A DNA stretch of 64,000 bases from Macrostomum lignano (taxonomy: Eukaryota). Each line of letters opens with the position of its first letter. Positions within the stretch are counted from its first letter, which is position 1. This document shows, piece after piece, positions 21,162-62,875 of this stretch. The notes under the pieces are model-generated. The model worked only from the letters and a program-made list of their open reading frames with translations, was not told the DNA's origin and did not search any database. The translations under genes were made by a program, and so were the position numbers. The stretch lies in the NCBI GenBank assembly GCA_002269645.1, contig NIVC01002120.1, positions 139,788-203,787 on the forward strand, written 5' to 3'.

Positions 21162-24100
21162 TCATTCTTCGCTGCCGCCGCCACGATGGCAGAGCAGGCG
21201 GCGGAGGCCGGACGGCCGGGCGGGCGGTGGGGCGGCCAGCACAGCGGCCTGGCCGGCGCGGCAGATGCTGACGGTGCCAGCGGGCTGCTGCCAGGGCTCG
21301 CCGTCGATCTGCATGGCAAAGCTCCGCCTCGTGCGGATGACGATCTCCGAGCACTGCGCCAGCCTGCGGCCGGAGCTGGGGAAGCCGCCGGCCACCAGGC
21401 CAGCGTGGACGGCGCCTTTTAAAGCCACGACTTCCAGCAGGCCGTCGCCCATGTCCTGCCTGGCGAACTGGCGGTGGCCGGGCCTGTCGGACCAGAGGCT
21501 GCGGCCACCGTACACCGAGGCGATGTTCAGCACGGCGACGCCTTCAAGCGGCGGCCCGTCGGCCAGGTTCAGCACGCGGCCGTCGCAGACGATGTCTAAG
21601 TCGCGGTGGAGGTTCTTGCAGGTGGCGCCGAGCAGCTCGGAGGCGCCGATGCCGGCATAGTAGATCTTGTTCCGCAGCCGCGAGTTGAACTGCTTCGGGT
21701 GGCGCTCCCGGCTGAGGTGCCACCGGCGGGCGATGGCCGCGTCCACCCCGATGCTGAAGTAGTTGTTCACGATGCCCACGGGCGGCCGGCCGGACTCCGC
21801 CGCCTGCTGGGCGTCCCCGCCGGCCGGCTCGGTCGAGAAGTCGATGCGCCAGCGGTCCAACCGGACGGCGGTGCCGGCGGCAACTCGCTGTAGGATGCCT
21901 TCCAACGGCTCGCCTTCGTAGCCGCCGCCCCAGCCGAGGCAGCGGGCGAGGTCGTTGCCGGTGCCCAGCGGCAGCACCGCCACAGGGGGCCGGTCGCAAG
22001 GCCAGTCGAAGGTGTCCATCGCCTCCAGCAGCCAGCCAGCGGTGCCGTCACCGCCGCAGACCAGCACGCGGAATTGCTGCAGCTGGTGAAACAGCCTGAG
22101 GCCGCGCTGGTAGCCATTTCGGGGAAAGGGTGGCACAATGCTGAATTGTCCCCCGATGGCGAATCCACCTTGTTACTATTTTAGACCACTATCTGAGGAA
22201 AAACCATTTTCATATCGCACTTATCACAGCGAATTGTGAATCCTGTTCTATTTTTAGACCGCATACTATGGTGAATCCCGTTTGTTTTTATTTTTAGACC
22301 ACACACAATATGGTAAATCCTGTTTCTATTTTTAAACCGTATACTATGGTGAATCCTGCTTGTTTCTATTTTTAGACTGCATACTATGGTGAAGCCTGTT
22401 TGTTTCTATTTTTAGACCGCATACAATGGTGAATCCCATTTGTTCCTATATTTAGACCACACATAAGATTGCCTGGCAATGCTGCAGCAGCTCACCATGG
22501 GGCCGCCATCGCTGATCAGGTCGTACACCTGCCTGGGGTTCAGCAGGTAGCGCAGCCTGCGCAGCACCCGGGCACCCTGCCGGCCGCCAGATTTCGGATT
22601 GACGAAGGCCAGCACTGGCACGCAGTCGGGCGGCGGCACCAAGCGGAGGGTCAGGGAGGTCGGCCGGCCGTCCAGCACGGCAGGATACAGGGCGCCTGGC
22701 GGCAGGAGCTGTTGGCGGAGTGGGCCGAGGTCGCAGGCCTGGTCGGCCCATTGCTCGGCGCAGCGGCCGTGCAGGCAGACTTGGCACCAGCGGCAGCGCA
22801 GGTTGGCGAGGCTGCGGCCCAAAGTCCGGCGGCACCTGCCGCAGCGGGCGCCAGCGCAGTTGCCCTCCGTCCAGTGGTGCTGCGGCTGCTGGCAGTCCCG
22901 GTGCTGCTGAGGCCCGGACTTCGCGTAGGTGGCGATGCAGGAGGCCGGCGCCCTGACCAGGCACTTGTCGTGAACAGTGTAGCGGCACAGCATGCAGCGC
23001 AGGCCCTGCAGTTGAAATCGGCATGATAGACTTCGACTGGCATGATTATGGAGCTGCCTAATTGCGTAATTCAATAACATAGGTGTTGCGAATTGCATAC
23101 AATACTACTGACAGTATGTACACGACTGATATTAGCATAGGCAGCAAAAATTGATTACACCTGACCTAAGGTGCAGATGTGCAACCGACAGCTCAATTAC
23201 GCAAATTGTTCCAGTGGCATCGGGAATCGAACCCCCGACCTTTCAGTCGTGAGCCCAACGCTTTAAACACTAGGCTACAACCCCCAGATAGCCAGCAGGC
23301 GCACAACTAACCAGCTTGTTCAGGCCAGTCAGCTGCCTCTGGCACGCATTGCAGTGCCGACCCTTCACGAACCGCCGCAGCCGCCATTCGTGGCTGCTGT
23401 CATCTTTAACGCTGGCGTCCAGACCGAGCAGCGGCAGGATCGGCACTGAGGAGGCGCCGCCGCGGAGCCAGTCGGCCAGGCTGAGCCGGCCGTCACCGTC
23501 GGAGTCCAGCCGCCACATCAGGTCTGTCAGGATCTGCGGATGCACAGGTTGCAGAGCTTCGGACTTATAAAATAAACTGTCTCAGGTTAAATAAATAATG
23601 GCTGCAGGTACAGTCAGATACAGGTGAGTCAGCTGCACGTTCGGACAGGTACAGGTGAGTCAGCTGCAGGTACAGACAGATACAGGTGAGTCAGCTGCCG
23701 GTACAGACAGATACAGGTGAGTCAGCTGCAGGTACAGTCAGATACAGGTGAGTCAGCTGCAGGTACAGTCAGATACAGGTGAGTCAGCTGCAGGTACAGA
23801 CAGATACAGGTGAGTCAGCTGCAGGTACAGACAGATACAGGTGAGTCAGCTGCAGGTACAGTCAGATACAGGTGAGTCAGCTGCAGGTACAGTCAGATAC
23901 AGGTGAGTCAGCTGCAGGTACAGACAGATACAGGTGAGTCAGCTGCAGGTACAGACAGATACAGGTGTGTCAGCTGCAGGTACAGACAGATACAGGTGAG
24001 TCAGCTGCAGATACAGTCAGATACAGGTGAGTCAGCTGCAGGTACAGACAGATACAGGTGAGTCAGCTGCCGGTACAGACAGATACAGGTGAGTCAGCTG

Positions 24101-26430: not shown

Positions 26431-26981
26431 GGGGACGCTTTCATAAGACCTAAATTTCACAACGCCTAAAACCACCACACTTCACAACGCCTAAATTTCA
26501 TATCGCCTAAATTTCACAATGCCTAAAATATTTGCACGCTCTTTCACATCGCCTAAATTTCATATTGCCTAAATTTCACAATGCCTAAAACCGAAAATGC
26601 AGAATCCTTCACAACGCCTAAATTTCATATTGCCTAAATTTCACAACGCCTAAAATCTTTGCTTCTCTCCTTCACATTCAGTTTTAGGTGTTGTGAAATT
26701 TAGGCGATATGAAGTTTAGGCGATATGAAAGAGCATGCAGATTTTTAGGCGTTGTGAAATTTAGGCAATATGAAATTTAGGCGATATGAAATTTAGGCGA
26801 TGTGAAGGAGCGTGCAGAAATTTTAGGCGTTGTGAAATTTAGGCAATGTGAAATTTAGGCGTTGTGAAGGAGGCTGCATTTTCAATTTTAGGCGTTGTTA
26901 AATCTAGGCATTATGAAATTTAGGTGATGTGAAATCACGTGCTTTAGGCGTTGTGAAATTTAGGTCTTATGAAGCGCCCCC
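26431..26981. mobile_element. Foldback/MITE element with arms built from tandem subrepeats
   Basis: Left end GGGGACGCTTTCATAAGACCTAAATTTCAC mirrors right end GTGAAATTTAGGTCTTATGAAGCGCCCCC. Both arms repeat an AAATTTCACAACGCCT-like motif. GGTGCAG is duplicated at 26424-26430 and 26982-26988. Confidence 0.85.
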
Positions 26982-29825: not shown

Positions 29826-30256
29826 TCAGATAAGAGAGTAGAGAGAAGAGATTTCAAGGAGAAGAGAGGATAGAAAGATGATGGAAAAGACAGTAGATAT
29901 GAGAGCTGTGAGATTAAAGACGAGTCGACGACAGAGGGGAGAGAAGAGGGGAGTGAGGCAGGAATGATGAAGAGAGAGAGCGAAGAGAAGAGAATGTAGA
30001 GGGAAGAAAGGAGGGGAGAGAGGAAAAATGAGAGAGCAAAGGAGGGAGGAAAGATGGGAGGAGAGAGGGATAAGAGAGTACAGAGGAGAGAGAAGAGAGA
30101 AGAGAGAAGAGAGATGAGACAGGAGACGGTAGAGAGGAGAGGGGAAAGATGAGAGATGAAAAAGGAGAGGGTAAGAGAGAAAATAGGAGTATGAGAAATG
30201 AGAGCAGAGAGAAGAGACGAGAGAGAAAAGAGAAGAGGGAGAGAGAGAGAGAGAGG
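29826..30256. repeat. GA-rich polypurine low-complexity tract (similar tracts at about 34333-34810, 35090-35650, 58230-58780, 59520-59690, 59810-60110, 60300-60900)
   Basis: Direct reading; all are purine-rich on the + strand. Confidence 0.9.
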
Positions 30257-30325
30257 AGGGCGCCTCCAATCTCAGGCACGGACGCGGTACATGTAAAAAG
30301 GACAAACAAGTCAAGATGATTTAAG

Positions 30326-30366
30326 TTGCCGATATTTCGAATTAGGTAAATTCTTCGTCAGGGCAA
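30326..30366 (-). ncRNA. Minimal type I hammerhead ribozyme motif in the PLE 3' region
   Basis: Minus strand TTGCC-CTGACGA-A-GAA-tttacctaa-TTC-GAAA-TAT-C-GGCAA: 5-bp stem I, intact core, 3-bp stem II, palindromic ATAT stem III, AUC cleavage triplet. Confidence 0.8.
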
Positions 30367-30970
30367 ATGAAAAGTAGCGACAAGTGGTGTTGTAAAAGTT
30401 ATTAAATAGGCGGGTTAGAGGGGAGAGAGAGTAGGCAGGTAGATAGAGAGCGTACGGTATGTACACTTGGTGTGAGTCGATAAAACACTATTAGAGTTGA
30501 AAATGCAAAATAAAAAACAGTGCACAAATAAAGTGAACCGCACGTGGGCTGCAGCGATCCTACACACGAAATAAATAATGGAATAGTGCGACTGCACCGG
30601 TGTCTAAAAAGGGGAAAGAGTGACTCTAAGCACTTTACAAAATTGACCTCAATAAATAAATAAGCAGTAAATCAATAAATAAATAAATAAGGTGAAAGGC
30701 CCTCAAAAACTTAAAAAAGAGCAATTGTACGATAAGCAAAAGAGTAAAAGTAAAAAGTGTAATAAAAAATACAGGGTGTCAAGAAACAATAGAAATGTTG
30801 ATGCAGAATAAATGCTGAGAATATACAAAAGCTGTGCTTGGGCTAGCGATGAGAATAAAAAAATTTCTAAGAAAGGAGCAACAAAAGGCTTGGTAGGTAC
30901 CGGCACGGTCTGACAAAGGTAAGTAGAAGGGAAAGTGAAGTAAAAAATCAAAAGGAAAAAATACAAAAAT

Positions 30971-31774
30971 TCAATCAGTGGTGGACTCCAGTCGACTGGG
31001 ACAGAGCAGCTGCCGGAGGTTCCGCCCTTTGGTGTAGGCGGGCAGCACCGGCGCCTCGCAGCACCGGGCCACGCGGTCCTCCACCGCGGCCACCAGGGCG
31101 TCCGACCTCGCACAATGGGGCAGGATCAGCGGGATGGCCGGGTTGTGCAGCGTGCCGGCAAGCTCGTTGACGCCGTGCGGGGTTTGAGTCTTTAACACCT
31201 CGATGAGCTTGGCCTCGTGGCGCTGCCGCCGCTCGTTCGCTCTGGGTCCCGTGCCGTCACGAGACCAGATGCCGGTGAAGGCGAAGTCCGCCAGACTGTG
31301 GCCATCACTGGTGAAATGGCGGGCCACCGGAGTGTCACGGGCGTGCCGGATGTCGCCGATGTGCGCCAGCATGCGGCCGCGGATGCTGTTGGCGGTCTCG
31401 CCTACGTAGATCGTGTGGTCGCACCGGCGGCAGAACACGGCATAGACGGCGTTGGTGGCGTTGCAGTCGATCCGCTGACTGATGATGAGCTGGACTGTCG
31501 TGGCTGCTGATCCGGGGCAGACGGAGGCGAACCTGGCGTGTGCCTGGCAGCACCTGCACAGCCGGGTCGGGTTGCACGGCAGAAAGCCGAATTCCCACCG
31601 TCTCGTCGGGTAGAAGCCCAGCTCCGTCAGCATCTCGTACTTGATCGTGCGCAGGAACCGCCGATTGTAGCCCTGGTGTTGCACCAGACTTGAAAACAGC
31701 CCGGTGCACGCTGCGTCGAAATCGGCCATCAGGGAACACCGCCGGGCGTATCTGAGGAGCTGGGACTTCACCAC
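30971..31774 (-). CDS. PLE thumb, Cys-rich linker and GIY-YIG endonuclease
   Basis: VKSQLLRYARRCS, PCNPTRLCRCC, NAVYAVFCRRC...IYVGET...RMLAH...PVARHF...E...PHGVNE. Confidence 0.92.
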   Translation of the reverse strand: MVKSQLLRYARRCSLMADFDAACTGLFSSLVQHQGYNRRFLRTIKYEMLTELGFYPTRRWEFGFLPCNPTRLCRCCQAHARFASVCPGSAATTVQLIISQRIDCNATNAVYAVFCRRCDHTIYVGETANSIRGRMLAHIGDIRHARDTPVARHFTSDGHSLADFAFTGIWSRDGTGPRANERRQRHEAKLIEVLKTQTPHGVNELAGTLHNPAIPLILPHCARSDALVAAVEDRVARCCEAPVLPAYTKGRNLRQLLCPSRLESTTD

Positions 31775-33171
31775 GCCCTGGAACGTCCGCTTCGGGTGGA
31801 AAGAGTCGCGGTGAATGAGCGTTCGGCTGTCGGTCGGCTAAAAAAAACCTTAGTTGCCAGGCGCTTAACGTCACCCTCGCGGTCCCAGAAGACGGTGGTG
31901 TCCAGGAAGTTGACCTCGGTGCTGCTGTAGCTCAGCTGCAACCTGATGTTCGGGTCGAGGCCATCCAGGAGCTCGTGGAAGCGGACCAGCTCGTCTCTCG
32001 TTCCGTGCCAGACGCCGAAGATGTCGTCGATGTAGCGCAGCCACAGGGCGGGCTTCTGCGGGCTGAGCTCCAGGCCCCGCTGCTCCCAGTAGCCCATGTA
32101 GATGTTGCTGTAGCTGGGCGCAAACGATTTTCCCATGGCCGTGCCTTTCACTTGCAGAAAAAATTTGCCATCGAACTCGAAGTCGTTGCGCTCCAGGTTC
32201 AGCTTGAGCAAACTGAGGAGGCTCGCGTCCGGGCGCCGGGCGTCCGGGTGCTCTCTGAAGGCCCTCTGTACGCACTCGAGTCCGGCCGCGGTCGGGATGT
32301 TGGTGTAAAGGCTGGCGACGTCCATGGTGAACAGAAAGGTCTCGCCCCGTGCCGGGCAGGTGATGTCTCTGATGGCCGCCTGGAAATGATCGGTATCCCT
32401 GATGAAGCTGGGCAGCTGGATGACGATCGGCTGCAGGAAGCTGTCGATGAAGCGGCCGCTGGCATATGATTCGCTGTCCACGTCAGACACGATGGGCCGG
32501 CCTGGCGGGATGTCGCCGAGCGGCCACGACTCGGCAGGCTTGTGAATCTTTGGCAGGATGTAAAAGCGTCGCGTCCGGAACTCCTCCTTCGGACAGAAGG
32601 CGGTGAACTGGCGTTTGTCGATAAGCCTGCGGTCCAGTAGCGACTGGAAGACGGCGCGGATTCTCTGGGCCGTGAAGCGGTTGATCGGCTCGTTCAGAGG
32701 CCGGTAGAAGGCCGGGTCGTCCAGCTGACGCAGGCATTCACGGACATAGTCCTGCCGGTCCACGATGACCAGCTGGCTGCCCTTGTCGGCCGGCTTGATG
32801 ACGATGGACTTGTCTGCCCGTAGATCTCGCAGTGCCTTCGCCTCCGCCTGACTGATGTTAGGAGCGTTCCTGCAGTCCCGGATGTTCTCCCTGACGTCGT
32901 CCAGCTCCGCCAGAGCGGCTTGAATTTCGGGCCGGAGGCGGCTCGGATCGATGCTGGCCGTTGGGCGGCGGGGAAGCGGCGGACCGTCGTTCACCGTCAG
33001 TTCGCGCTTGAAGCCGCGAGCCGCCGACACGGCCAGACGCTCGCCAAAGTCGCGGACGCCGGACGCCAGTGACTCCGCCGAGGTGCACCGAGGAGCCACT
33101 ACGAAGGACTGGCCGCGCTCCAGCAGTTGCAGTTCAGTCGGTGCGAGAGCGCGGCTGGAGAGGTTCGTCAC
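31768..33171 (-). CDS. PLE reverse transcriptase
   Basis: IKPADKGS, FYILPKIHK, GRPIVS, MDVASLYTNI, GTAMGKSFAPSYSNIYM, WLRYIDDIF, VNFLD. A missing A at 31840-31847 (KVFF-KPTD) separates it from the next ORF. Confidence 0.93.
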   Translation of the reverse strand: MTNLSSRALAPTELQLLERGQSFVVAPRCTSAESLASGVRDFGERLAVSAARGFKRELTVNDGPPLPRRPTASIDPSRLRPEIQAALAELDDVRENIRDCRNAPNISQAEAKALRDLRADKSIVIKPADKGSQLVIVDRQDYVRECLRQLDDPAFYRPLNEPINRFTAQRIRAVFQSLLDRRLIDKRQFTAFCPKEEFRTRRFYILPKIHKPAESWPLGDIPPGRPIVSDVDSESYASGRFIDSFLQPIVIQLPSFIRDTDHFQAAIRDITCPARGETFLFTMDVASLYTNIPTAAGLECVQRAFREHPDARRPDASLLSLLKLNLERNDFEFDGKFFLQVKGTAMGKSFAPSYSNIYMGYWEQRGLELSPQKPALWLRYIDDIFGVWHGTRDELVRFHELLDGLDPNIRLQLSYSSTEVNFLDTTVFWDREGDVKRLATKVFFSRPTAERSFTATLSTRSGRSRAW

Positions 33172-40118: not shown

Positions 40119-42029
40119 ATCATTACTAAGGTCCGGAAGAAACTGGTAATTTAAAACAAAAATACGCGATTATCTAGACAATTTAAGACTAGAAACAAGA
40201 AGAAAAGAATTTTTTTAAAAGCTGTATTTTAATAGGCAATAAGTTTGTTTCGGTGTCAATTTATGCGATTGCCCGCCAGCGCGTACCTGCGTAGCCGATC
40301 GACTTCAGCTCCATTCTAAACTTAGATCTCACCATAGATCTTATCTTAAAATAGATCTTTGAGTCTCGATAATTTTTCGACCATCTTGTTAATTGTTCTT
40401 GGTATTTCGTTGTGTAACGTGACTGAGTGTTAAAAAACTCGCAAAATTTCACTTTAATTCACAAATCCTAGATTCGGAAACCGAGATTTTGTTCCTAAGT
40501 TAGAATTTTTCTAAAAAATAATAGTTAGAATTCAATAGCTGCGTCACAGTAGATTTTCTTTTTAAATCGATCGTTAAATCAAATTATACGGCATGTACTC
40601 GTACGCTCGTAGCAAGATTCTCTCCGATTTTGATCCAACCGATCGATACTCATATGACAACTGTTGTAGGCTGCGTTCTTGATTGTACATGTATTGCTTT
40701 GCTTGCTTGTATTAATTCAACTCGAAAATAGTGGGAGACTAATCAGATATACGAAAATTGATCTAATCGAATGAAGAATCGATAGCAAAGGCACTCATGG
40801 GCAGCGGCAGCTGGTCAGCTAGATGGGTCACAGCGGAGAGTGCAAATTCTCGGTATAAAAAATTATGCAAATAAGATGCACATAATTTGAGGCTCCAAAT
40901 TCTAAAAAATGTGCATTAAAAATGAGGAAAGTAAAGTAACGCAGACAGGACTGACTACTCATAGGCCATGTTCAGGCCATTCTGGCACGGTAATCGCAAT
41001 AAAACAGCACAATTCTGCACAATTTGTATAATTAAATTTTAACACAGGGTTTAAAAAACTAAGCTCACACGAGACACCAAGGAAAGAGCAGCTGCAAGTT
41101 TCGATTCTGAAACAGCATTGCATTTTTCATAAATATTTCATCAAAATAATTATAAAGCGACAGCAGACAGCACAACTGGAAAAAAGATAAACACTCAAGG
41201 AGTAGGGGAGATCAGGACATCAGAGAGTTCAGGGAATGAGAATCATCACGGGATGAGGAGGCTCGGGAGAGATGAGGAGAGGATCAGGGGAGGATCAAAG
41301 GGAGAATGAGGGGAGGGAGGACGAGAAGGCGATTAGGGAGGGAGGAGGGTCAGGGGAGGATAAGGAGGGGTCAGGGGAGGATAAGGAGGGATCAGGGGAG
41401 GATAAGGAGGGATCAGGGGAGGATAAGGAGGGATCAGGGGAGGATAAGGAGGGATCAGGGGAGGATCAGGGGAGGATCAGGGGAGGATCAGGGGAGGATC
41501 AGGGGAGAATCAGGAGAGGATCAGGGGAGGATCAGGAGGGATCAGGGGAGGATCAGGGGAGGATCAGGGGAGAATCAGGGGAGGATCAGGGGAGAATCAG
41601 GAGAGGATCAGGGGAGGATCAGGAGGGATAAGGGGAGGATCAGGGAGGATCAGAGGAGGATCAGGAGGGATCAGGGGAGAATAAGGGGAGGATCAGGAGA
41701 GGATCAGGAGAGGGAGGATCAGGGGAGGATCAGGGGAGGATCAGGAGAGGATCAGAGCAGGATCAGGAGAGGATCAAGAGAGGGAGAATCAGGGGAGGAT
41801 CAGGAGAGGATCAGAGCAGGATCAGGAGAGGATCAAGAGAGGGAGAATCAGGGGAGGATCAGGAGAGGATCAGGAGAGGATCAGAGCAGGATCAGGAGAG
41901 GATCAGGAGAGGATCAGAGCAGGATCAGGAGAGGATCAGGAGAGGATTAGAGCAGGATCAGGAGAGGATCAGGGGAGGATCAGAGCAGGATCAGAGCAGG
42001 ATCATAGTAAGACAAAACTCAATACTACT

Positions 42030-42067
42030 TGCGACGCGTTTCGGCCAAAACCAGCCATCTTCAGGCA
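42030..42067 (-). ncRNA. Minimal hammerhead ribozyme motif, left arm of a palindrome
   Basis: Reverse complement reads TGC-CTGAAGA-T-GGC-tggttttg-GCC-GAAAC-GC-GTC-GCA. Confidence 0.72.
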
Positions 42068-42104
42068 CTATCGAACAGAATTTATTTCAACCTATTAACG
42101 ATAG

Positions 42105-42142
42105 TGCCTGAAGATGGCCAGTTTCAGCCGAAACGCGTCGCA
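42105..42142 (+). ncRNA. Minimal hammerhead ribozyme motif, right arm of a palindrome
   Basis: TGC-CTGAAGA-T-GGC-cagtttca-GCC-GAAAC-GC-GTC-GCA, with palindromic ACGCGT stem III and a GUC site at 42139. Confidence 0.72.
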
Positions 42143-43634
42143 AACAATATTGAGTTTTGTCTTACTATTATCTGTTAAGAGTGCTTCTCTACCGCAAGAG
42201 CAGGATCAGGAGAGGATCAGGAGAGGATTAGAGCAGGATCAGGGAAGGATCAGGGGAGGATCAGGAGAGGATCAGAGCAGGATCAGGAGAGGATCAGGAG
42301 AGGATCAGGAGAGGGAGGATCAGGGGAGGATCAGGAGAGGATCAGAGCAGGATCAGGGAAGGATCAGGGGGGATCAGGAGAGGATCAGAGCAGGATCAGG
42401 AGAGGATCAGAGCAGGATCAGGAGAGGATCAGGGGAGGATCAGGAGACGATCAGGAGAGGATCAGAGCAGGATCAGGGGAGGATCAGGGGAGGATCAGGA
42501 GAGGATCAGGAGAGGATCAGGAGAGGGAGAATCAGGGGAGGATCAGGAGAGGATCAGAGCAGGATCAGGGGAGGATCAGGGGAGGATCAGGGGAGGATCA
42601 GGAGACGATCAGGAGAGGATCAGAGCAGGATCAGGGGAGGATCAGGGGAGGATCAGGAGAGGATCAGGAGAGGATCAGAGCAGGATCAGGAGAGGATCAG
42701 GAGAGGATTAGAGCAGAATCAGGAGAGGATCAGGGGAGGATCAGGAGAGGATCAGGAGAGGGAGAATCAGGGGAGGATCAGGAGAGGATCAGAGCAGGAT
42801 CAGGGGAGGATCAGAGCAGGATCAGGGGAGGATCAGGGGAGGATCAGGGGAGGATCAGGAGAGGATCAGAGCAGGATCAGGAGACGATCAGGAGAGGATC
42901 AGAGCAGGATCAGGGGAGGATCAGGGGAGGATCAGGAGAGGGAGGATCAGGGCAGGGAGATTCAAGGGAGAGAAGATCAGAGTGGTCCCACATGCGGGCA
43001 GCGATAACCAAGGAAATGCAACAATTGTAGACAAAGACTGCACAACAGAAAAGGGCGCAAATGTGCTGCCACAGATGGACACACACAGGACACAGACAAG
43101 GGGAGGCGGCCACTAAGCGGGGTCACAAAAGCGGAGACTGGCATCAAAGTCAACAACACAGAAGACAGCAGGCGGACACACAAAATCAGATGGCTTGCGT
43201 TCAGATTCTATTGGTAAAGAATAATCAACCAGCAGGCATGGAATTTGCAATCCGTGATACCGAATAATACAAGTGGGAAAATAAAAAGTGCATAATAACT
43301 GCAGGAAAGTATCTGAGCTGCTGAGCATTAATCTGATTGGCTTGCTTGAACGGCGGCACACAAAAAAAGCGTACGGACTTGACGGAAGCCACGACAGCCA
43401 ATCAGAGACACTTTGCACATTTTTTATCGATTGCACAGTAGACTGCATTACACTACTGAATAGTAAGCACGTAAGTAGGCGATCGGGGGGTTTGATTGCA
43501 AAATATAAACGGCATAAAAAATGGAATTAAGAGGGAGGAGTTTATTAGCAGAGAACCAATCAAGACTGACACCAGCAGAAATTGATAAAACTAATTTTTA
43601 CACGCCGAACCCCCTTCCCCCAGCAACCGCCAAG

Positions 43635-49348: not shown

Positions 49349-52300
49349 ATGATGCCAGCGACTACCTGGTGTCTGCAGATCAACACCCAGCACTGCGTGG
49401 CGGCGTCGGTCAACCTGATGCGCACGGCAGAGCAACAGCTTCCGGGCCTGGTCTTCGTACAGGAGCCCTGGATGACTAAAGGTAAGCCAAATAATGTGCC
49501 ATCTGGCTACCACTGTTTTTGCATGGCGGGCTCTCAGCCTCGCCCAAGATCTCTGGTCTTTGCTGCAAAAGCTTTTGAGGCATGGATGAGACCTGATCTC
49601 TCGACTGGGGACATCTGTGTTGTTCAAATCAATAACCTCATTCCCAATAAACCTGTGCTGGTAGCTTCTGCCTATTTCCCGGGCGATGCCCCAGTTGTCT
49701 GCGACGCGTTAGTCAACCTTACTGACTATGCTGCGTCCCATCGGTTCGAGCTGCTCATTGCAGGGGATGTGAACGCACACCACCTGCATTGGGGCAGCAA
49801 GAACATCAATAGCAGAGGCGAGGAGCTGCTGGCCTATGTCAGCAGCACTAACCTCAACTTCTGTAACGTGGGCAATGCACCAACGTTCAATAATGGGCGG
49901 TGGGCCGAAGTCATCGACACCACCATCGCCTCACCCGGACTGCTTTCCGCAGTTACGGGCTGGCGAGTGTGGGACGAGGACTCGCTCTCGGACCACCGCT
50001 TTATCCGCTTTTGCATTGGGCCGACCAAGCAAAAGCCTAAGGTCACTTGGAGTCGGAACGTCAGGAACACCGATTGGGCCGCCTTTGGCTCGAAGCTGAG
50101 CCGCGGCCTTCGGGATCTTGACCCCCCCAGTGACCTCTCTGACTGCCAGGTGGTGGACGATCTCGCCTCCTCCCTGGGCGGGGCGATCACCACTGCCTTT
50201 GAAGCAGCCTGCCCCCTAAAGGCCTATAAAGGCAAGAAATCTGCTCCCTGGTGGAACCCAGAGCTCGGGGCCCTTCGGCGCCGAGCCAGGACCCTAAAAA
50301 GGCGAGCGCTCAAAACCAAAGACCCATCTGACAAAGAGGCCTATACCCGTGCGATCCACGAGTTTAAGGGCCAAGTCAGAAGGGCCAAGACGGCCAAGTG
50401 GCGCCAATATTGCGAAGGGCTTGAGGGCTCTCGCCCCGTAGCCCGCGTGGTTAAGGCACTCACTAATGACCGTTTTTCTAAACTCTCTGTTGTGAAGAGA
50501 CCTGACGGCTCGGTCACAGAGAGTTCGGAAGAGACTCTAGAGCTCATGCTCAACAGTTTTTTCCCTAAATCTCCGACTCAGCAGGGCCCGCCCGACCACA
50601 CAGTGGGAGGGCAAGGCCTAGCAAAGTCTATGATCACCAAAGACCGCATTATTAGAGCGGCAAGGTCCTTTAACCCGTTCAAGGCGCCTGGGCCCGACGG
50701 CATCTACCCAGCGTTCTTGCACGAGGCGGTGAAAAACCACCGCTTCCTGGACCTGCTCTGTCGTCTCCTCGAGCTTGTGTGGAGCTGGGCTATGTACCAG
50801 TTGCGTGGAGAGAGGCCCGGGTGGTCTTTATCCCCAAGCCTGGAAAGAGCGACTACCAATCGGTGAAGGCCTTCAGGCCTATCAGCCTCACTTCTTTCTG
50901 CCTCAAGCTCCTCGAGAGACTGGTGCTTTGGCGCCTACTTTCGGTCGAGCTGAAGCGCTTCCCACTCTCGCAGAACCAGCACGCCTTCCGCGCGGGCAGG
51001 TCAACCGAGAGTGCTCTCCATGTCATTGTTGACTTCCTGGAGAGGGCCGTTCTTGGCAGCGGCTTTGCCCTCTCGCTTTTCCTGGACATTGAGGGGGCCT
51101 TCGACAACGTCATCTTCGAGGCCTTTTGCAGAGCCCTGGAATCCAGGGCCACGCACCCTCACCTTGTCCGGTGGATCATGTTCATGATCCGAAACCGCAC
51201 TGTTGTGGCCCACCTGAGCGGCAGCTCTCTTTCGGTGCCTGTCCTGAAAGGGGGCCCCCAGGGCGGCGTTCTCACCCCCGTTCTCTGGAACATGGTCATG
51301 GATGAGTTGCTTTGCAGTGATCTCCACGACCCCATTCTCAAGGTGGGCTATGCCGATGATGTGACCGCGATATGCGCGGGCCCCTCGGTTGATACCATCA
51401 GAGACCTTCTGCAGGGCTTTCTGGGACGAGCGGAGCGTTGGGCAGACCAATGTGGCCTTAGACTCTCAGAGTCGAAAACCACAGCAGTCATGTTTACCAA
51501 CAAACTGCTCTGGACCATTAAGCCCCTCACCCTCTATGGAAAGAACATTTCCATGGAGAAGCAGGTCCGCTGCCTGGGCCTCACTCTGGACCACAGGCTT
51601 AACTGGACTCCGCACATTCAAACTAAAGCCAAAAAAGCCCTGGCTGTACTGGCTCAGATCAGGCGCGCCGTGGGCACCACCTGGGGGCTCACCCCCAGGA
51701 AGCTGTGGTGGATTTACACTGCCATCATCCGCCCCTCGATCAGTTACGCCAGCCTCGTGTGGGCTAGCGGCCTGAGCGTCAAGAGCAACCTCGACGCTCT
51801 CTACAAAATCCAGGGCAGAGCCTGCCGCATGACTATGGGCGCTCCACCCTCTACTCCTTTTGAAGGCATGAATGCCTTCCTCTGTGCCCCTCCTTTGGAT
51901 ATTTATATCAAAGGAGAGGCGGCGAAGAGCACCCGGCGTCTTCTGGATGCTGGGGTGGCCTTCAAGAAAGTGCGGGCCTTTAAGAAGCGGTCGCTTATCC
52001 CGCACTCTGACCTCTGCCTCAAGGCTCTCGAGGAGTGTGGCGGGCTCAACATCCTCACGGACTCGATCCCAGCCACCCTTCTCCTGAGCCAAAGGTATAA
52101 GGTCACCATTCAGCCTCGACACGAGGCGAGTGACAGCTGGAGCGACTCTGAAGTCCACTGTTACACTGACGGCTCTATGAGGCATGGTCTTTCAGGCTTC
52201 GGAGCTTGCGTCTTCTTCAAGGGAGAAGTGGTGTGGAACTACTCCCAGCACACTGGGCTCAACTCCAGTGTTTTTCAGAGCGAGGTGCTTGCCATCAGCT

Positions 52301-53052
52301 CCTGCGCGGCAGAGCTGCGCCGAAGGCAGCTTAGCGGCCGGAAATTTATTTTTCACTCTGACAGCCAAGCAGCCCTTCGGGCCCTCTGCCGCAGCACCGC
52401 CAGCTCCAGGTCCGTCCTGGACTGCAACACCCAGCTCAACGGGCTTGCGCTAGGCAACCAGGTGGAGCTCAGATGGATCCCGGGCCACGCCGGCTTCCTC
52501 GGCAACGAGCGCGCTGACCTGCTGGCCAAGGCTGGCTCCGCCGGCGCGCTATTGGGGCCGGGCCCGGGTGCCCCCATCCCCGCCTCGGTGATCAATTCCC
52601 GCGTTAAGCGCTGGGCTGACTCCGAGCATCTCCGCAGGTGGCACGACACCCGGAATTGTAGGCAATCCCGTGCTGCCGTCCCCTGTCCCTCTCCTCTCCT
52701 GCGTAGAGCCCTCCTCAGGCTCAACCGCAGAGACCTCAGAGCAGTTAGCATGGCCCTCTCCGGGCATGGCTGCTTCTCTCGCCACCGCTTCCTTCAGGGC
52801 CAAGTACCCGAGGAGCGGTGCCCCTTCTGTCGCTCAGGCAGTGAAAACGCCGAGCATTTTATCTGCCACTGCCCGGTTTTCACCAGGGCCAGGCTTACTC
52901 ACCTCGGGCCAAACCCGGTTCTCTCCGACGTTTGCAGGCCCGAGAGCATCCCGCTGCTCGCCCGGTACCTCAGGGACACCGGACGAGCTGATTTCTTCCC
53001 CACCGTCGGTGAGGAGGACCGCGCTGCAGGCGAGACCGACAGGTCCCGCTGA
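49349..53052 (+). CDS. LINE ORF2: APE endonuclease, RT, RNase H, CCHC finger (1-nt deletion near 50770)
   Basis: LQINTQH, QEPW, GDVNAHH, SDHRFI; KAPGPDGI; FRPISLTS, LDIEGAFD, PQGGVLTP, YADD; YTDGS, SDSQAAL, WIPGH, GNERADLLAK; CPFC...EH...C. Adding one C restores LLRACVELGYVP. Confidence 0.93.
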
Positions 53053-61282: not shown

Positions 61283-62192
61283 TTAGACTTAATACCTCAG
61301 ACATAATAGGCCCATATAGCTATATTATATAGACCTAATTATTACTAATATATAGACCTAATTAATACATAATACATAGACTAAGTCTAACATGAATGAT
61401 GAAATTTCATCAGTTTCCTTCTGGCATAACTCTAAGTGTGAAATGGACTATGGGAATTAGGTGTAGGCCTATTTATACAAAAAGCCAATTTATTATTTAT
61501 GATTTATTTGAAATCAAAAATAAGGACAAAGGTTTTATAGCATTTTCATTTAACTTATTAGCTAAGATTCACTCAAAATATACTCAAAAATGGTTGGCAA
61601 ACTACTACTACTATTCATTACTTTTAGCCTTTGGCTTTGTCTTTGTTGAAACTTTAACAAAGAAGTATAAAGATCCCTTTTATTGAATGCATTTTTAAAG
61701 ATAGAGCTAAAAAATAAGAACTAGGCCTAAACTTTAAATTTCCATTTGAACCATTGGGAGACAAATTTGTTACAACCAGGATGTTACAGCTGACGCTGAG
61801 ATATTAGAAAATAAAATCATAGTAGCCATTGAGTCATTGACTTAAAATGGTGATTTTACTGATCTACCTTTTGAAACTAGGCCTATTTAATTGATAATTT
61901 AATAAATTTCCACTAGCTTGCCTTTTGCAAATAACATACTTGATATACTTAGTAGAATATACTGACTAAAGGATAAGAATACAAGACTATTGAAAATAGT
62001 AATCTAATGTAGGTATCATTTCATTGCCTTCCTTGGTAAATACTAAATAGTGTTTTTTATGTTAACTACCCGCATAGAAAATTGAAGCCATATTCCTAAA
62101 GTACAGGAAATACGCATTTGTTTCCCCATTGATATTCGCATTGATATTCGAATTTTAACAAAAGCAAAATACTAAAAGCAACCCGTAGCATG

Positions 62193-62875
62193 AAACTTTA
62201 CACAGAGTAAACTGCAACCGCGAAACGACTATTGGTCAAGTTTCAGCTCGATATGTAACTTTGGCTCTGAGCAGGAGCGATTTTCGATGTGTTCCATTTA
62301 AAATACATGTGATTCCAAAATTCGTATTGATATTCGAGTACAGGTACTTCTGCTTCACTGATCTTGACGAAACTTTACACAGAGTAAACTGCAACCGTGA
62401 AACGACTATTGTCAAGTTTCAGCTCGATATGTAACTTTGGCTCTGAGCAGGAGCGATTTTCGATGTGTTCCATTTAAAATACATGTGATTCCAAAATTCG
62501 TATTGATATTCGAGTACAGGTACTTCTGCTTCACTGATCTTGACGAAACTTTACACAGAGTAAACTGCAACCGTGAAACGACTATTGGTCAAGTTTCAGC
62601 TCGATATGTAACTTTGGCTCTGAGCAGGAGCGATTTTCGATGTGTTCCATTTAAAATACATGAGATTCCAAAATTCATATTGATATTCGAGTACAGGTAC
62701 TTCTGCTTCACTGATCTTGACAAAACTTTACACAGAGTAAACTGCAACCGTGAAACGACTATTGGTCAAGTTTCAGCTCGATATGTAACTTTGGCTCTGA
62801 GCAGGAGCGATTTTCGATGTGTTCCATTTAAAATACATGTGATTCCAAAATTCATATTGATATTCGAGTACAGGT
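62193..62875. repeat. 177-bp tandem repeat (about 3.9 units), last unit cut by the LINE
   Basis: AAACTTTACACAGAG at 62193, 62370, 62546 and 62723. Confidence 0.95.

What the first reader, a model, noticed from the sequence alone, without database searches (positions are those of the whole stretch)
42004..42196. Palindromic cassette with two inverted hammerhead ribozymes inserted in a satellite
A 165-bp hairpin (arms of about 70 bp, 25-nt AT-rich loop) plus a 28-nt tail interrupts the GGATCAGGAGA array. Each arm encodes a minimal type I hammerhead (CUGAAGA, GAAAC, palindromic ACGCGU helix III, GUC), one per strand. Arm mismatches fall mainly in the stem II loops and just outside stem I, while the cores are identical, as expected if the fold is constrained. 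Either transcript carries one ribozyme and its own antisense inhibitor. It differs from the PLE hammerhead at 30326, so it belongs to another family: an inverted solo pLTR, a retrozyme-like element or a new ribozyme-bearing MITE.
Basis: partly seen in the sequence, partly recalled or inferred. Interest (0 to 1): 0.78.

Follow-up and report, generated by a model that had tools for sequence, protein, structure and literature searches.

The report
Twin inverted hammerhead retroelement stub
A 192-bp hairpin lodged in a satellite is most likely the dead stub of a Penelope-like retrotransposon insertion, two head-to-head truncated copies each with a minimal hammerhead ribozyme; this is a known pattern, with one unexplained bias in how the two copies differ.

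Summary
At 42005-42168 two 70-nt arms (7 mismatches) flank a 25-nt AT-rich spacer, and a 28-29-nt extension sits on the right side only. The whole interrupts an 11-bp purine-rich array. Each arm carries a complete minimal type I hammerhead, one per strand, both pointing outward. A stem-aware descriptor finds such motifs 0.003 times per shuffled window. Stems I and II covary with hammerheads taken from tandem Penelope-like elements (PLEs) and from ten metagenomic contigs.

Head-to-head 5'-truncated copies, a tail at one end and insertion into simple repeats are the published signature of PLE insertions. I found the same twin hairpin four more times in unrelated hammerhead families. The best reading is therefore a very short, dead-on-arrival PLE or PLE-mobilised insertion. 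Its ribozymes are locked in a -110 to -128 kcal/mol hairpin.

No parent element or second copy could be found.

One oddity remains. All 7 arm differences are transitions, and all keep G·U pairs in the minus-strand hairpin (post hoc P about 3e-4). That hints at editing, selection or consensus error.

Verdict: new member of a known kind, modest interest.

The parts
41265..42004 (+). Left part of the host array (11-bp purine-rich units GGATCAGGAGA / GGATCAGGGGA / GGATCAGAGCA); last unit ends ...GGATCA at 42004
42005..42073 (-). Left arm: 5'-truncated copy in minus orientation, with its 3' end at 42005 and no tail. Carries stem I, the hammerhead and 29 nt downstream of the cleavage site
42033..42064 (-). 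Minimal type I hammerhead of the left copy: CUGAAGA, unpaired U, stem II GGCUG/UGGCC (two G·U), GAAA, palindromic ACGCGU, C17. Predicted cleavage is 3' of C at 42033
42074..42098 (.). 25-nt unique A+T-rich spacer (hairpin loop). Presumably element sequence just upstream of stem I from one of the two copies, i.e. the turning point
42099..42168 (+). Right arm: 5'-truncated copy in plus orientation
42108..42139 (+). Minimal type I hammerhead of the right copy. Stem II is reduced to GGC/GCC by C·A and A·C mismatches. Predicted cleavage is between 42139 and 42140
42169..42197 (+). One-sided 28-29-nt extension ('tail') continuing the right copy only
   Evidence: PLE tail described in PMC8557442 and PMC11167929
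42198..42941 (+). Array resumes in phase (GAGCAGGATCAGG...). AGAGCAGGATCA occurs on both sides (41993-42004 and 42197-42208), so a target-site duplication of up to 12 bp cannot be told from the array period
30263..33171 (-). Context, not part of the cassette: a nearly full-length PLE of another family. The RT and GIY-YIG ORF runs 33171..30989 with a frameshift near 31840. Its own minimal hammerhead is at 30361-30331, and its 3' end abuts a GA-rich array

Best explanation
The cassette is a relic of one retrotransposition event by a hammerhead-bearing Penelope-like element, or by a short non-autonomous RNA that such an element mobilises.

Reverse transcription started in the 3' region just downstream of the hammerhead, at the longer of two start sites. 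That left the 28-nt tail on the right. Synthesis stopped only about 10-35 nt upstream of the ribozyme. A second, inverted copy of the same short stretch was then made. This happened either by the cDNA snapping back on itself or by priming on the other DNA strand at the shorter start site.

The result is two head-to-head 70-nt copies around a 25-nt turn, inside a purine-rich minisatellite.

Shown here: the anatomy, the hammerhead motifs and their agreement with PLE hammerheads, and the recurrence of the architecture elsewhere.
Inferred: the parent element and the order of events.

In this context the ribozymes should be inert. There is no same-sense partner for the dimeric helix III, and each is paired to its antisense arm. 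Any transcript would be a long double-stranded hairpin.
For: 1. Complete hammerhead cores with stems in both arms. The stem-aware descriptor gives 3 hits in the window against 0.003 expected.

2. The same layout occurs once per unit, in sense, between the ORFs of tandem RT/GIY-YIG elements L012-L015. That layout is one unpaired base 5' of stem II, a 3-6 bp stem II, a palindromic mini helix III and a short stem I.

3. Covariation. With the PLE-locus hammerheads, 84.3% of cells pair, against 23-48% when partners are slid, and 10 of 11 pairs change on both sides. With the metagenome set the figure is 81.8%, and stem II reaches 92.9%.

4. Cervera and de la Pena 2014 (PMC4209133) describe these traits for PLE minimal hammerheads. 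They also note pairs of motifs close together on opposite strands, attributed to truncated PLEs.

5. Craig et al. 2021 (PMC8557442) describe PLE insertions as strongly 5'-truncated. These often have an adjacent inverted 5'-truncated copy and a 30-40 bp tail at one end only, and show a microsatellite bias.

6. Frangieh et al. 2024 (PMC11167929) show that both DNA strands are cut and extended, and that the tail is the stretch between two internal RT start sites.

7. Four further twins carry hammerheads of unrelated flank sequence. They are L002 (29-nt spacer), L004 (22-nt and 0-nt spacers) and L009. With the window's, all five are head-to-head.

8. The window holds another hammerhead-bearing PLE whose 3' end also abuts a GA-rich array.
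Against: - No parent element or second copy was found. There is none in the window, none in prokaryote or viral collections, and no similarity to the window's own PLE 3' end.
- The source genome is not represented in the protein collection, so homology to a pLTR is untested.
- The ten metagenomic contigs with the same core show no RT. The link of this exact subtype (U bulge, ACGCGU) to PLEs therefore rests on architecture and the literature.
- The tail is 28-29 nt, just under the published 30-40.
- The target is not the AT-rich type cut by the Anolis enzyme.
- The arm differences do not look neutral (7 of 7 of one class). A plain dead relic does not predict that.
- Rfam hammerhead models give no hit. 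They also miss the hammerheads in real PLE loci, so this counts for little.
Confidence: 0.72

Rival explanations
1. The source was not a truncated autonomous PLE. It was a short non-autonomous hammerhead repeat (an animal 'non-LTR retrozyme' or solo unit) copied by PLE machinery, and the cassette is close to its full length.
For: The arms begin exactly at the 5' end of stem I. The two copies end within 25 nt of each other, which is easier to explain if the template RNA was itself short. Retrozymes are reported as pLTR-derived and occur as solo monomers (bioRxiv 10.64898/2026.07.22.740005).
Against: There is no direct tandem repeat here, which is the defining arrangement of retrozymes. The ends do not coincide with the ribozyme cleavage sites. 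No other unit was found.
Confidence: 0.2
2. The hairpin is, or was, a functional minus-strand hairpin RNA locus. It would be an hpRNA, siRNA or miRNA-like precursor born from a PLE twin insertion and kept paired by selection.
For: All 7 arm differences are transitions that leave G·U pairs in the minus-strand fold. That fold is a continuous 69-70 bp stem at -128.3 kcal/mol, against -109.5 for the plus strand. The four other twins have 48 transitions among 85 mismatches, about 0.28 per strand class. On that basis, 7 of 7 in one class has P about 3e-4. Long-hairpin miRNA models score up to 68.7 bits (mir-2513).
Against: The test is post hoc, on seven sites in one locus. The miRNA hits are below gathering score and generic for any long hairpin: L002, L004 and L009 hit other miRNA models in the same way. 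There is no expression data and no conservation data. A burst of editing or consensus errors would give the same pattern.
Confidence: 0.1
3. It is a DNA transposon of the MITE or foldback kind that happens to carry hammerhead motifs in its terminal inverted repeats.
For: Long inverted arms with a short spacer resemble foldback elements. Another foldback-like structure exists at 26470-26942.
Against: The ends are asymmetric, with a 28-nt tail on one side. A target-site duplication cannot be shown. There is a single copy in 64 kb. The arms are entirely accounted for by a hammerhead plus its 3' flank. The same head-to-head arrangement recurs in unrelated hammerhead families.
Confidence: 0.04
4. 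The palindrome is secondary or artefactual. Either a single solo fragment was duplicated in inverted order by a replication template switch, or the palindrome or its seven differences were created by assembly or consensus errors.
For: Palindromes are error-prone in long-read consensus. Four of the seven differences sit at putative CpG sites.
Against: The arms are diverged rather than perfect, there is a unique spacer, and the array is in phase on both sides. The same architecture appears in independent metagenome assemblies.
Confidence: 0.05

Closest known systems
Minimal (dimeric) type I hammerhead ribozymes of Penelope-like elements (Cervera and de la Pena 2014, PMC4209133)
   Same: Full conserved core, one unpaired base at the 5' end of stem II, a short stem I with a poorly defined loop, and helix III reduced to A15.1-U16.1 around a palindrome. 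A stable helix III can therefore form only between two copies. Pairs of motifs on opposite strands were already noted there.
   Different: Here the bulged base is U and the palindrome is ACGCGU; the PLE loci I fetched have A and ACGU. The two motifs are only 43 nt apart, inside one perfect hairpin, rather than 100-700 bp apart. Activity is untested.
PLE insertion architecture: 5'-truncated copy, adjacent inverted 5'-truncated copy and a one-sided 30-40 bp tail (Evgen'ev and Arkhipova 2005; Craig et al. 2021, PMC8557442; Frangieh et al. 2024, PMC11167929)
   Same: Head-to-head inverted copies with 3' ends outward, a tail on one side only, and insertion in simple-repeat DNA.
   Different: An extreme miniature: 70 nt per copy, no coding sequence, and a tail of 28-29 nt. 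The parent is not identified. The target is a GA-rich 11-bp array rather than (TA)n, (CA)n or AT-rich DNA.
Animal non-LTR retrozymes (Cervera and de la Pena 2020, PMC7229834; Li et al. 2026 preprint)
   Same: Short non-coding hammerhead-bearing repeats related to pLTRs. Solo monomers exist.
   Different: Retrozymes are direct tandem repeats processed into circles. This is a single inverted pair whose ends are not at cleavage sites.
Hairpin-RNA (hpRNA) and endo-siRNA loci formed from inverted duplications (from my own knowledge, not tested here)
   Same: A long, nearly perfect inverted repeat with G·U-only imperfections on one strand.
   Different: No expression, processing or target evidence. 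The stem is only about 70 bp.

Membership tests
Hammerhead ribozyme, type I, minimal/dimeric PLE variant | Conserved core C3-U4-G5-A6-N7-G8-A9, G12-A13-A14, A15.1/U16.1, H17 | tested here: met
   Both arms read CUGAAGA ... GAAA-CGCG-U-C
Hammerhead ribozyme, type I, minimal/dimeric PLE variant | Helices I and II flank the core in register, with open ends at helix I | tested here: met
   Stem II has 3 bp (right) or 5-6 bp with G·U (left). Stem I has 3 bp plus 5 bp beyond an internal loop. The columns covary across 11-14 hammerheads: 82-84% paired against 23-48% when slid. The rows were chosen with a descriptor that demands the inner 3 bp.
Hammerhead ribozyme, type I, minimal/dimeric PLE variant | Unpaired base 5' of stem II, and a palindromic mini helix III allowing a dimeric helix | tested here: met
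   U at 42115 and ACGCGU at 42133-42138. Every comparator has the 1-nt offset. Described in PMC4209133.
Hammerhead ribozyme, type I, minimal/dimeric PLE variant | Match to curated covariance models (Rfam Hammerhead families) | tested here: not met
   No hit at gathering score or at E<=10. The control shows the test is blind to this variant: hammerheads in real PLE loci and in the metagenome contigs are missed too.
Hammerhead ribozyme, type I, minimal/dimeric PLE variant | Self-cleavage at H17 | not testable with these tools
   Needs in vitro transcripts. The hairpin (-110 to -128 kcal/mol) dwarfs the isolated-arm folds (-9 to -13).
Penelope-like element insertion (pLTR-derived fragment) | 5'-truncated copy with an adjacent inverted 5'-truncated copy, 3' ends outward | tested here: met
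   Four more head-to-head twins elsewhere.
Penelope-like element insertion (pLTR-derived fragment) | 30-40 bp tail at one end only | tested here: met
   28-29 nt at 42169-42197, absent from the left copy. Slightly shorter than published.
Penelope-like element insertion (pLTR-derived fragment) | Sequence homology to the pLTR or 5' region of an RT/GIY-YIG element of the same genome | tested here: inconclusive
   No similarity to the only PLE in the window. No other copy was reachable. A peptide read from the arm has no homologue. The full source genome was not available.
Animal non-LTR retrozyme | Direct tandem repeats of a 150-400 bp unit, each with a sense hammerhead | tested here: not met
   Only an inverted pair; no direct repeat of the unit in the window
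MITE / foldback DNA transposon | Symmetric terminal inverted repeats, fixed target-site duplication, many copies | tested here: inconclusive
   The ends are asymmetric because of the tail. Any duplication is masked by the 11-bp period. One copy in the window. Genome-wide copy number is unknown.
miRNA precursor families (mir-2513, MIR6440, MIR6274 and others) | Score at or above the Rfam gathering threshold | tested here: not met
   Best is 68.7 bits against 89 required. The hits are of the generic long-hairpin type.

The most novel reading that the evidence does not exclude
The seven arm differences are not neutral decay. They would be either the footprint of a nucleic-acid deaminase or the result of selection.

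Deaminase options:
- C-to-U on one continuous snap-back minus-strand cDNA, which would also argue that PLE twin copies arise by self-priming rather than by two primings.
- A-to-I on a minus-strand hairpin RNA that was then retro-copied.

Selection option: selection keeps a PLE-derived minus-strand hairpin RNA paired, i.e. a young small-RNA locus aimed at its own parent element.
Probability: 0.2. Interest if true: 0.55.

Novelty: new member of a known kind. Interest (0 to 1): 0.3.

Why it matters
As it stands, this is a clean miniature example of how Penelope-like elements insert: inverted twin, one-sided tail, simple-repeat target. It is useful for annotation. Such hairpins can be mistaken for miRNA precursors or MITEs, and Rfam does not flag their hammerheads.

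The two copies stop within 25 nt of each other, and spacers in three of the four other twins are equally short. That is hard to reconcile with two independent truncations. It points to a fold-back step, which bears on the still unresolved PLE integration mechanism.

If the one-directional transition pattern proves real, it would add either an editing footprint or a case of a retroelement stub turned into a hairpin-RNA locus.

Tried and rejected
- **Rfam.** No hammerhead hit at gathering score or at E<=10. I rejected this as evidence after the controls showed the models also miss hammerheads in real PLE loci and in all comparators.
- **miRNA hits.** The sub-threshold hits (mir-2513 and others) are generic long-hairpin matches. 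One literature hit on mir-2513 was irrelevant.
- **Bare core pattern.** It is at chance level, so I replaced it with a stem-aware descriptor.
- **Search for the parent or other copies.** None in the window. A family-specific 21-base pattern found nothing in prokaryote genomes or viral contigs. The core pattern gave one hit in prokaryote genomes, in a high-GC bacterial MAG, probably chance. The metagenome scan returned only other families.
- **ORF-start idea.** A9-U-G10.1 forms an ATG that opens a frame through the arm and tail, reminiscent of the Anolis element whose ORF starts at stem II. The 28-aa peptide has no homologue by word-indexed search or exhaustive search. The frame closes quickly in other U-bulge hammerheads. 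I dropped it.
- **PLE coding capacity in the metagenome contigs.** No tblastn hit and no Pfam RT in L005 between its two direct hammerheads.
- **Host identification.** The PLE RT is at most 49% identical and the DAGK exon about 50% identical to anything in the collection. The host is only 'a metazoan'.
- **Covariance model from independent hammerheads.** Abandoned because MAFFT misplaced the helix III length difference. I used N-padded fixed-column alignments with pair counting instead.
- **Thermodynamic folding of single arms and homodimers.** It does not recover the hammerhead as the minimum-energy fold. This is uninformative for minimal hammerheads.
- **Inverted partners near PLEs.** None around the window's own PLE or in the tandem PLE loci.
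Full report
**What is there**

The region 41265-42941 is an array of 11-bp purine-rich units: GGATCAGGAGA, GGATCAGGGGA and GGATCAGAGCA. It is interrupted at 42005-42197 by unrelated sequence.

The repeat finder reports one inverted repeat there: arms 42000-42073 and 42099-42172, 74 nt, 89% complementary, 25 nt apart. The outer 4-5 nt of that call are array sequence. The real arms are 42004/5-42073 and 42099-42168, 70 nt with 7 mismatches.

The spacer AACAGAATTTATTTCAACCTATTAA is 76% A+T. To the right of the right arm lie 28-29 further non-array bases (TATCTGTTAAGAGTGCTTCTCTACCGCA). These have no counterpart on the left.

Joining the flanks shows that the array continues in phase. Because AGAGCAGGATCA is present on both sides, two readings are equally possible: no target-site duplication, or one of up to 12 bp.

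**Are the hammerheads real?**

Read outward from the centre, each arm is:
- CGAUAG-UGC
- C-U-G-A-A-G-A
- one unpaired U
- stem II
- G-A-A-A
- C-G-C-G
- U-C
- GCA, then five bases, then UAUUG

All conserved core positions are present. H17 is C.

Helix III is only A15.1-U16.1 around CGCG. ACGCGU is therefore self-complementary and can form a 6-bp helix only between two copies.

Stem I has 3 bp next to the core and 5 more (CGAUA/UAUUG) beyond an asymmetric internal loop.

The bare core pattern proves nothing: 6 matches in the window against 5.0 expected. A descriptor that also demands stem II of at least 3 bp, stem I of at least 3 bp and a palindromic helix III finds exactly three sites. These are the two arms and the motif at 30361-30331 (-). 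The expectation is 0.003 per dinucleotide-shuffled window.

**Independent comparators**

A scan of metagenome contigs used the two conserved blocks with a free 8-18 nt gap. It returned ten contigs, L001-L010. Their flanks are unrelated to the cassette. In all ten, the free gap folds into a hairpin closed next to the core.

I also fetched three loci that encode relatives of the window's PLE protein. Two are tandem RT/GIY-YIG elements. The descriptor finds one sense hammerhead per unit in the non-coding stretch between ORFs. It has the same layout: one unpaired base before stem II, stem II of 4-6 bp, palindromic ACGU, and stem I of 3-6 bp.

I placed these in fixed columns and counted the pairs. 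With the metagenome set, 81.8% of cells pair, against 29-43% when partners are slid, and stem II reaches 92.9%. With the PLE-locus set, 84.3% pair, against 23-48%, and 10 of 11 pairs change on both sides.

There is a caveat. The rows were chosen with a descriptor that requires the inner three pairs, and the first pair of each stem was fixed by the search pattern in the metagenome set.

Rfam's hammerhead models give no hit at gathering score or at E<=10. They equally miss every comparator, including those in real PLE loci. That negative result therefore carries no weight.

These traits are the ones Cervera and de la Pena (2014, PMC4209133) gave for PLE minimal hammerheads. They include the unpaired base at the 5' end of stem II, the short helix I, and the small palindromic helix III that implies dimeric action.

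**What the cassette is**

The published picture of PLE insertions (Craig et al. 2021, PMC8557442) has four features:
- strong 5' truncation
- often an inverted 5'-truncated copy directly adjacent, forming inverted repeats
- a 30-40 bp tail often present at only one end
- a bias for microsatellites

Frangieh et al. (2024, PMC11167929) showed in vitro that an Anolis PLE protein cuts and extends both DNA strands. They also showed that reverse transcription starts internally at two nearby sites. The stretch between those sites is the tail.

The cassette matches point for point:
- two copies, 5' ends facing each other
- 3' ends outward
- one copy ending at the short site (42005)
- the other copy 28-29 nt further on (42197)
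- a simple-repeat target

The same window holds a nearly full-length PLE of another family. Its ORF runs 33171..30989 on the minus strand, is 40-49% identical to RT/GIY-YIG proteins, and has a frameshift near 31840. Its 3' end, about 68 nt past its own hammerhead, also abuts a GA-rich array. Its 3' region is not similar to the cassette beyond chance.

**The architecture recurs**

Among the metagenome contigs I found four more head-to-head twins with hammerheads:
- L002: arms of at least 71 nt, 29-nt spacer
- L004: 167-nt arms with a 22-nt spacer, and 116-nt arms with no spacer
- L009: 228-nt arms

With the window's, all five have the ribozyme 5' ends facing the centre. Cervera and de la Pena had already noted pairs of minimal hammerheads close together on opposite strands and attributed them to truncated PLEs.

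So this is a known kind of object in an unusually small version.

**Mechanistic inference**

The two copies stop within 25 nt of each other, and spacers in three of the four other twins are 0-29 nt. Two independent truncations along a multi-kilobase template would rarely coincide so closely.

I therefore favour a fold-back: the first-strand cDNA, primed at the tail end, turns and copies itself. Two separate primings on a very short template RNA would also do. This step is inference.

**Function**

Neither transcript has a second same-sense ribozyme to complete helix III. Each ribozyme is also complementary to the other arm.

The full hairpin folds at -109.5 kcal/mol on the plus strand and -128.3 on the minus strand. 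The isolated arms fold at only -9 to -13.

The ribozymes should therefore be silent, and any transcript would be a 70-bp double-stranded hairpin.

The seven differences lie at right-arm coordinates 42119, 42120, 42125 and 42126 (stem II pairs 4 and 5) and at 42144, 42145 and 42147 (internal loop of stem I). Seven differences missing about 17 core and helix III positions out of 70 has P about (53/70)^7 = 0.14.

In the right copy the changes break stem II (C·A, A·C). In three of the four other twins, one arm has lost core or helix III bases. I see no evidence that the ribozyme fold is under constraint here.

**An unexplained pattern**

All seven differences are transitions. All are oriented so that the minus-strand hairpin keeps G·U pairs while the plus strand gets A·C.

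The other twins show 48 transitions among 85 mismatches, about 0.28 per strand class. On that basis, seven of seven in one class has P about 3e-4. Local tandem arrays suggest a transition share near 0.4 (rough). The test is post hoc and rests on one locus.

Possible causes:
- Selection for pairing of a minus-strand RNA.
- C-to-U deamination of a continuous minus-strand cDNA. This fits the tail marking the RT start. Four of the seven changes would be at CpG, which is not significant (P = 0.27).
- A-to-I editing of a minus-strand hairpin RNA that was later retro-copied. All seven derived G have a 5' U or A (P = 0.04).
- Consensus errors in a palindrome.

An outgroup copy and raw reads would settle this.

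**Limits**

No parent element or second copy was reachable. The source genome is absent from the protein collection, and the host can only be called a metazoan. A peptide read from the ATG formed by A9-U-G10.1 has no homologue.

**Verdict**

It is wrong on the constraint argument, and the MITE idea has no support.

This is a new member of a known kind, with one small unexplained oddity.

Noticed in passing
window 42025-42053 and 42119-42147: All 7 differences between the arms are transitions, and all preserve G·U pairing in the minus-strand hairpin only. Under scenario B (the G of each G·U pair derived from A), all 7 derived G have a 5' U or A. Four of the seven sit at putative CpG sites.
   Followed up: partly
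window 42114-43007 (+): A9, the bulged U and G10.1 form an ATG. It opens a 297-aa frame through the arm and tail and on into the satellite. In the Anolis PLE the ORF is reported to start at stem II, with the cut site 26 nt downstream, and here C17 is the 26th base from the A. No protein homologue was found, so this is probably an artefact of the stop-free array.
   Followed up: yes
window 30263-33171 (-): Nearly full-length Penelope-like element (RT and GIY-YIG) with a frameshift near 31840. Its minimal hammerhead is at 30361-30331, with A as the bulged base and AUAU as helix III. The 3' end abuts a GA-rich array at about 30000-30262. No upstream pLTR hammerhead and no inverted partner.
   Followed up: partly
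window 26470-26942: Foldback-like structure. Two blocks of about 22-bp subrepeats (TTTCACAACGCCTAAATTTCATATTGCC...) lie in inverted orientation, giving arms of 110-129 nt at 88-92% complementarity.
   Followed up: no
window 49349-53052 (+): Non-LTR retrotransposon with an apurinic-type endonuclease ORF followed by RT and RNase H.
   Followed up: no
window 21162-22136 (-): Uninterrupted 324-aa diacylglycerol-kinase reading frame (catalytic and accessory domains). It is only about 50% identical to any animal DGK, so the host has no close relative in the protein collection.
   Followed up: partly
window, whole: Extreme density of mini- and microsatellites: 33 TRF rows scoring at least 200, and my rough sum of distinct arrays from that table is about 20% of the window. 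There are also sharp G+C swings (0.28-0.70 per 2 kb). One example is a 177-bp unit repeated 3.9 times at 98% identity at 62192-62875.
   Followed up: no
L004 299-530 and 648-1003: One 2.2-kb metagenome contig carries two different hammerhead families, each as a head-to-head twin hairpin, about 120 bp apart.
   Followed up: partly
L005 567-600 and 3079-3113: Two direct, sense hammerheads of the U-bulge/ACGCGU type lie 2.5 kb apart, which is pLTR-like spacing. No recognisable RT lies between them.
   Followed up: partly
window 42027-42145 (-): The Rfam mir-2513 model scores 68.7 bits (gathering 89) and shares CUUCAG/CUGAAGAUGG with the arms. Probably a generic long-hairpin match, but it shows how such twins could be mistaken for miRNA precursors.
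   Followed up: partly
L011 5112-5151 (-): The hammerhead core pattern, with some stem pairing, occurs once in a high-GC Acidimicrobiales MAG chromosome. Most likely chance.
   Followed up: no
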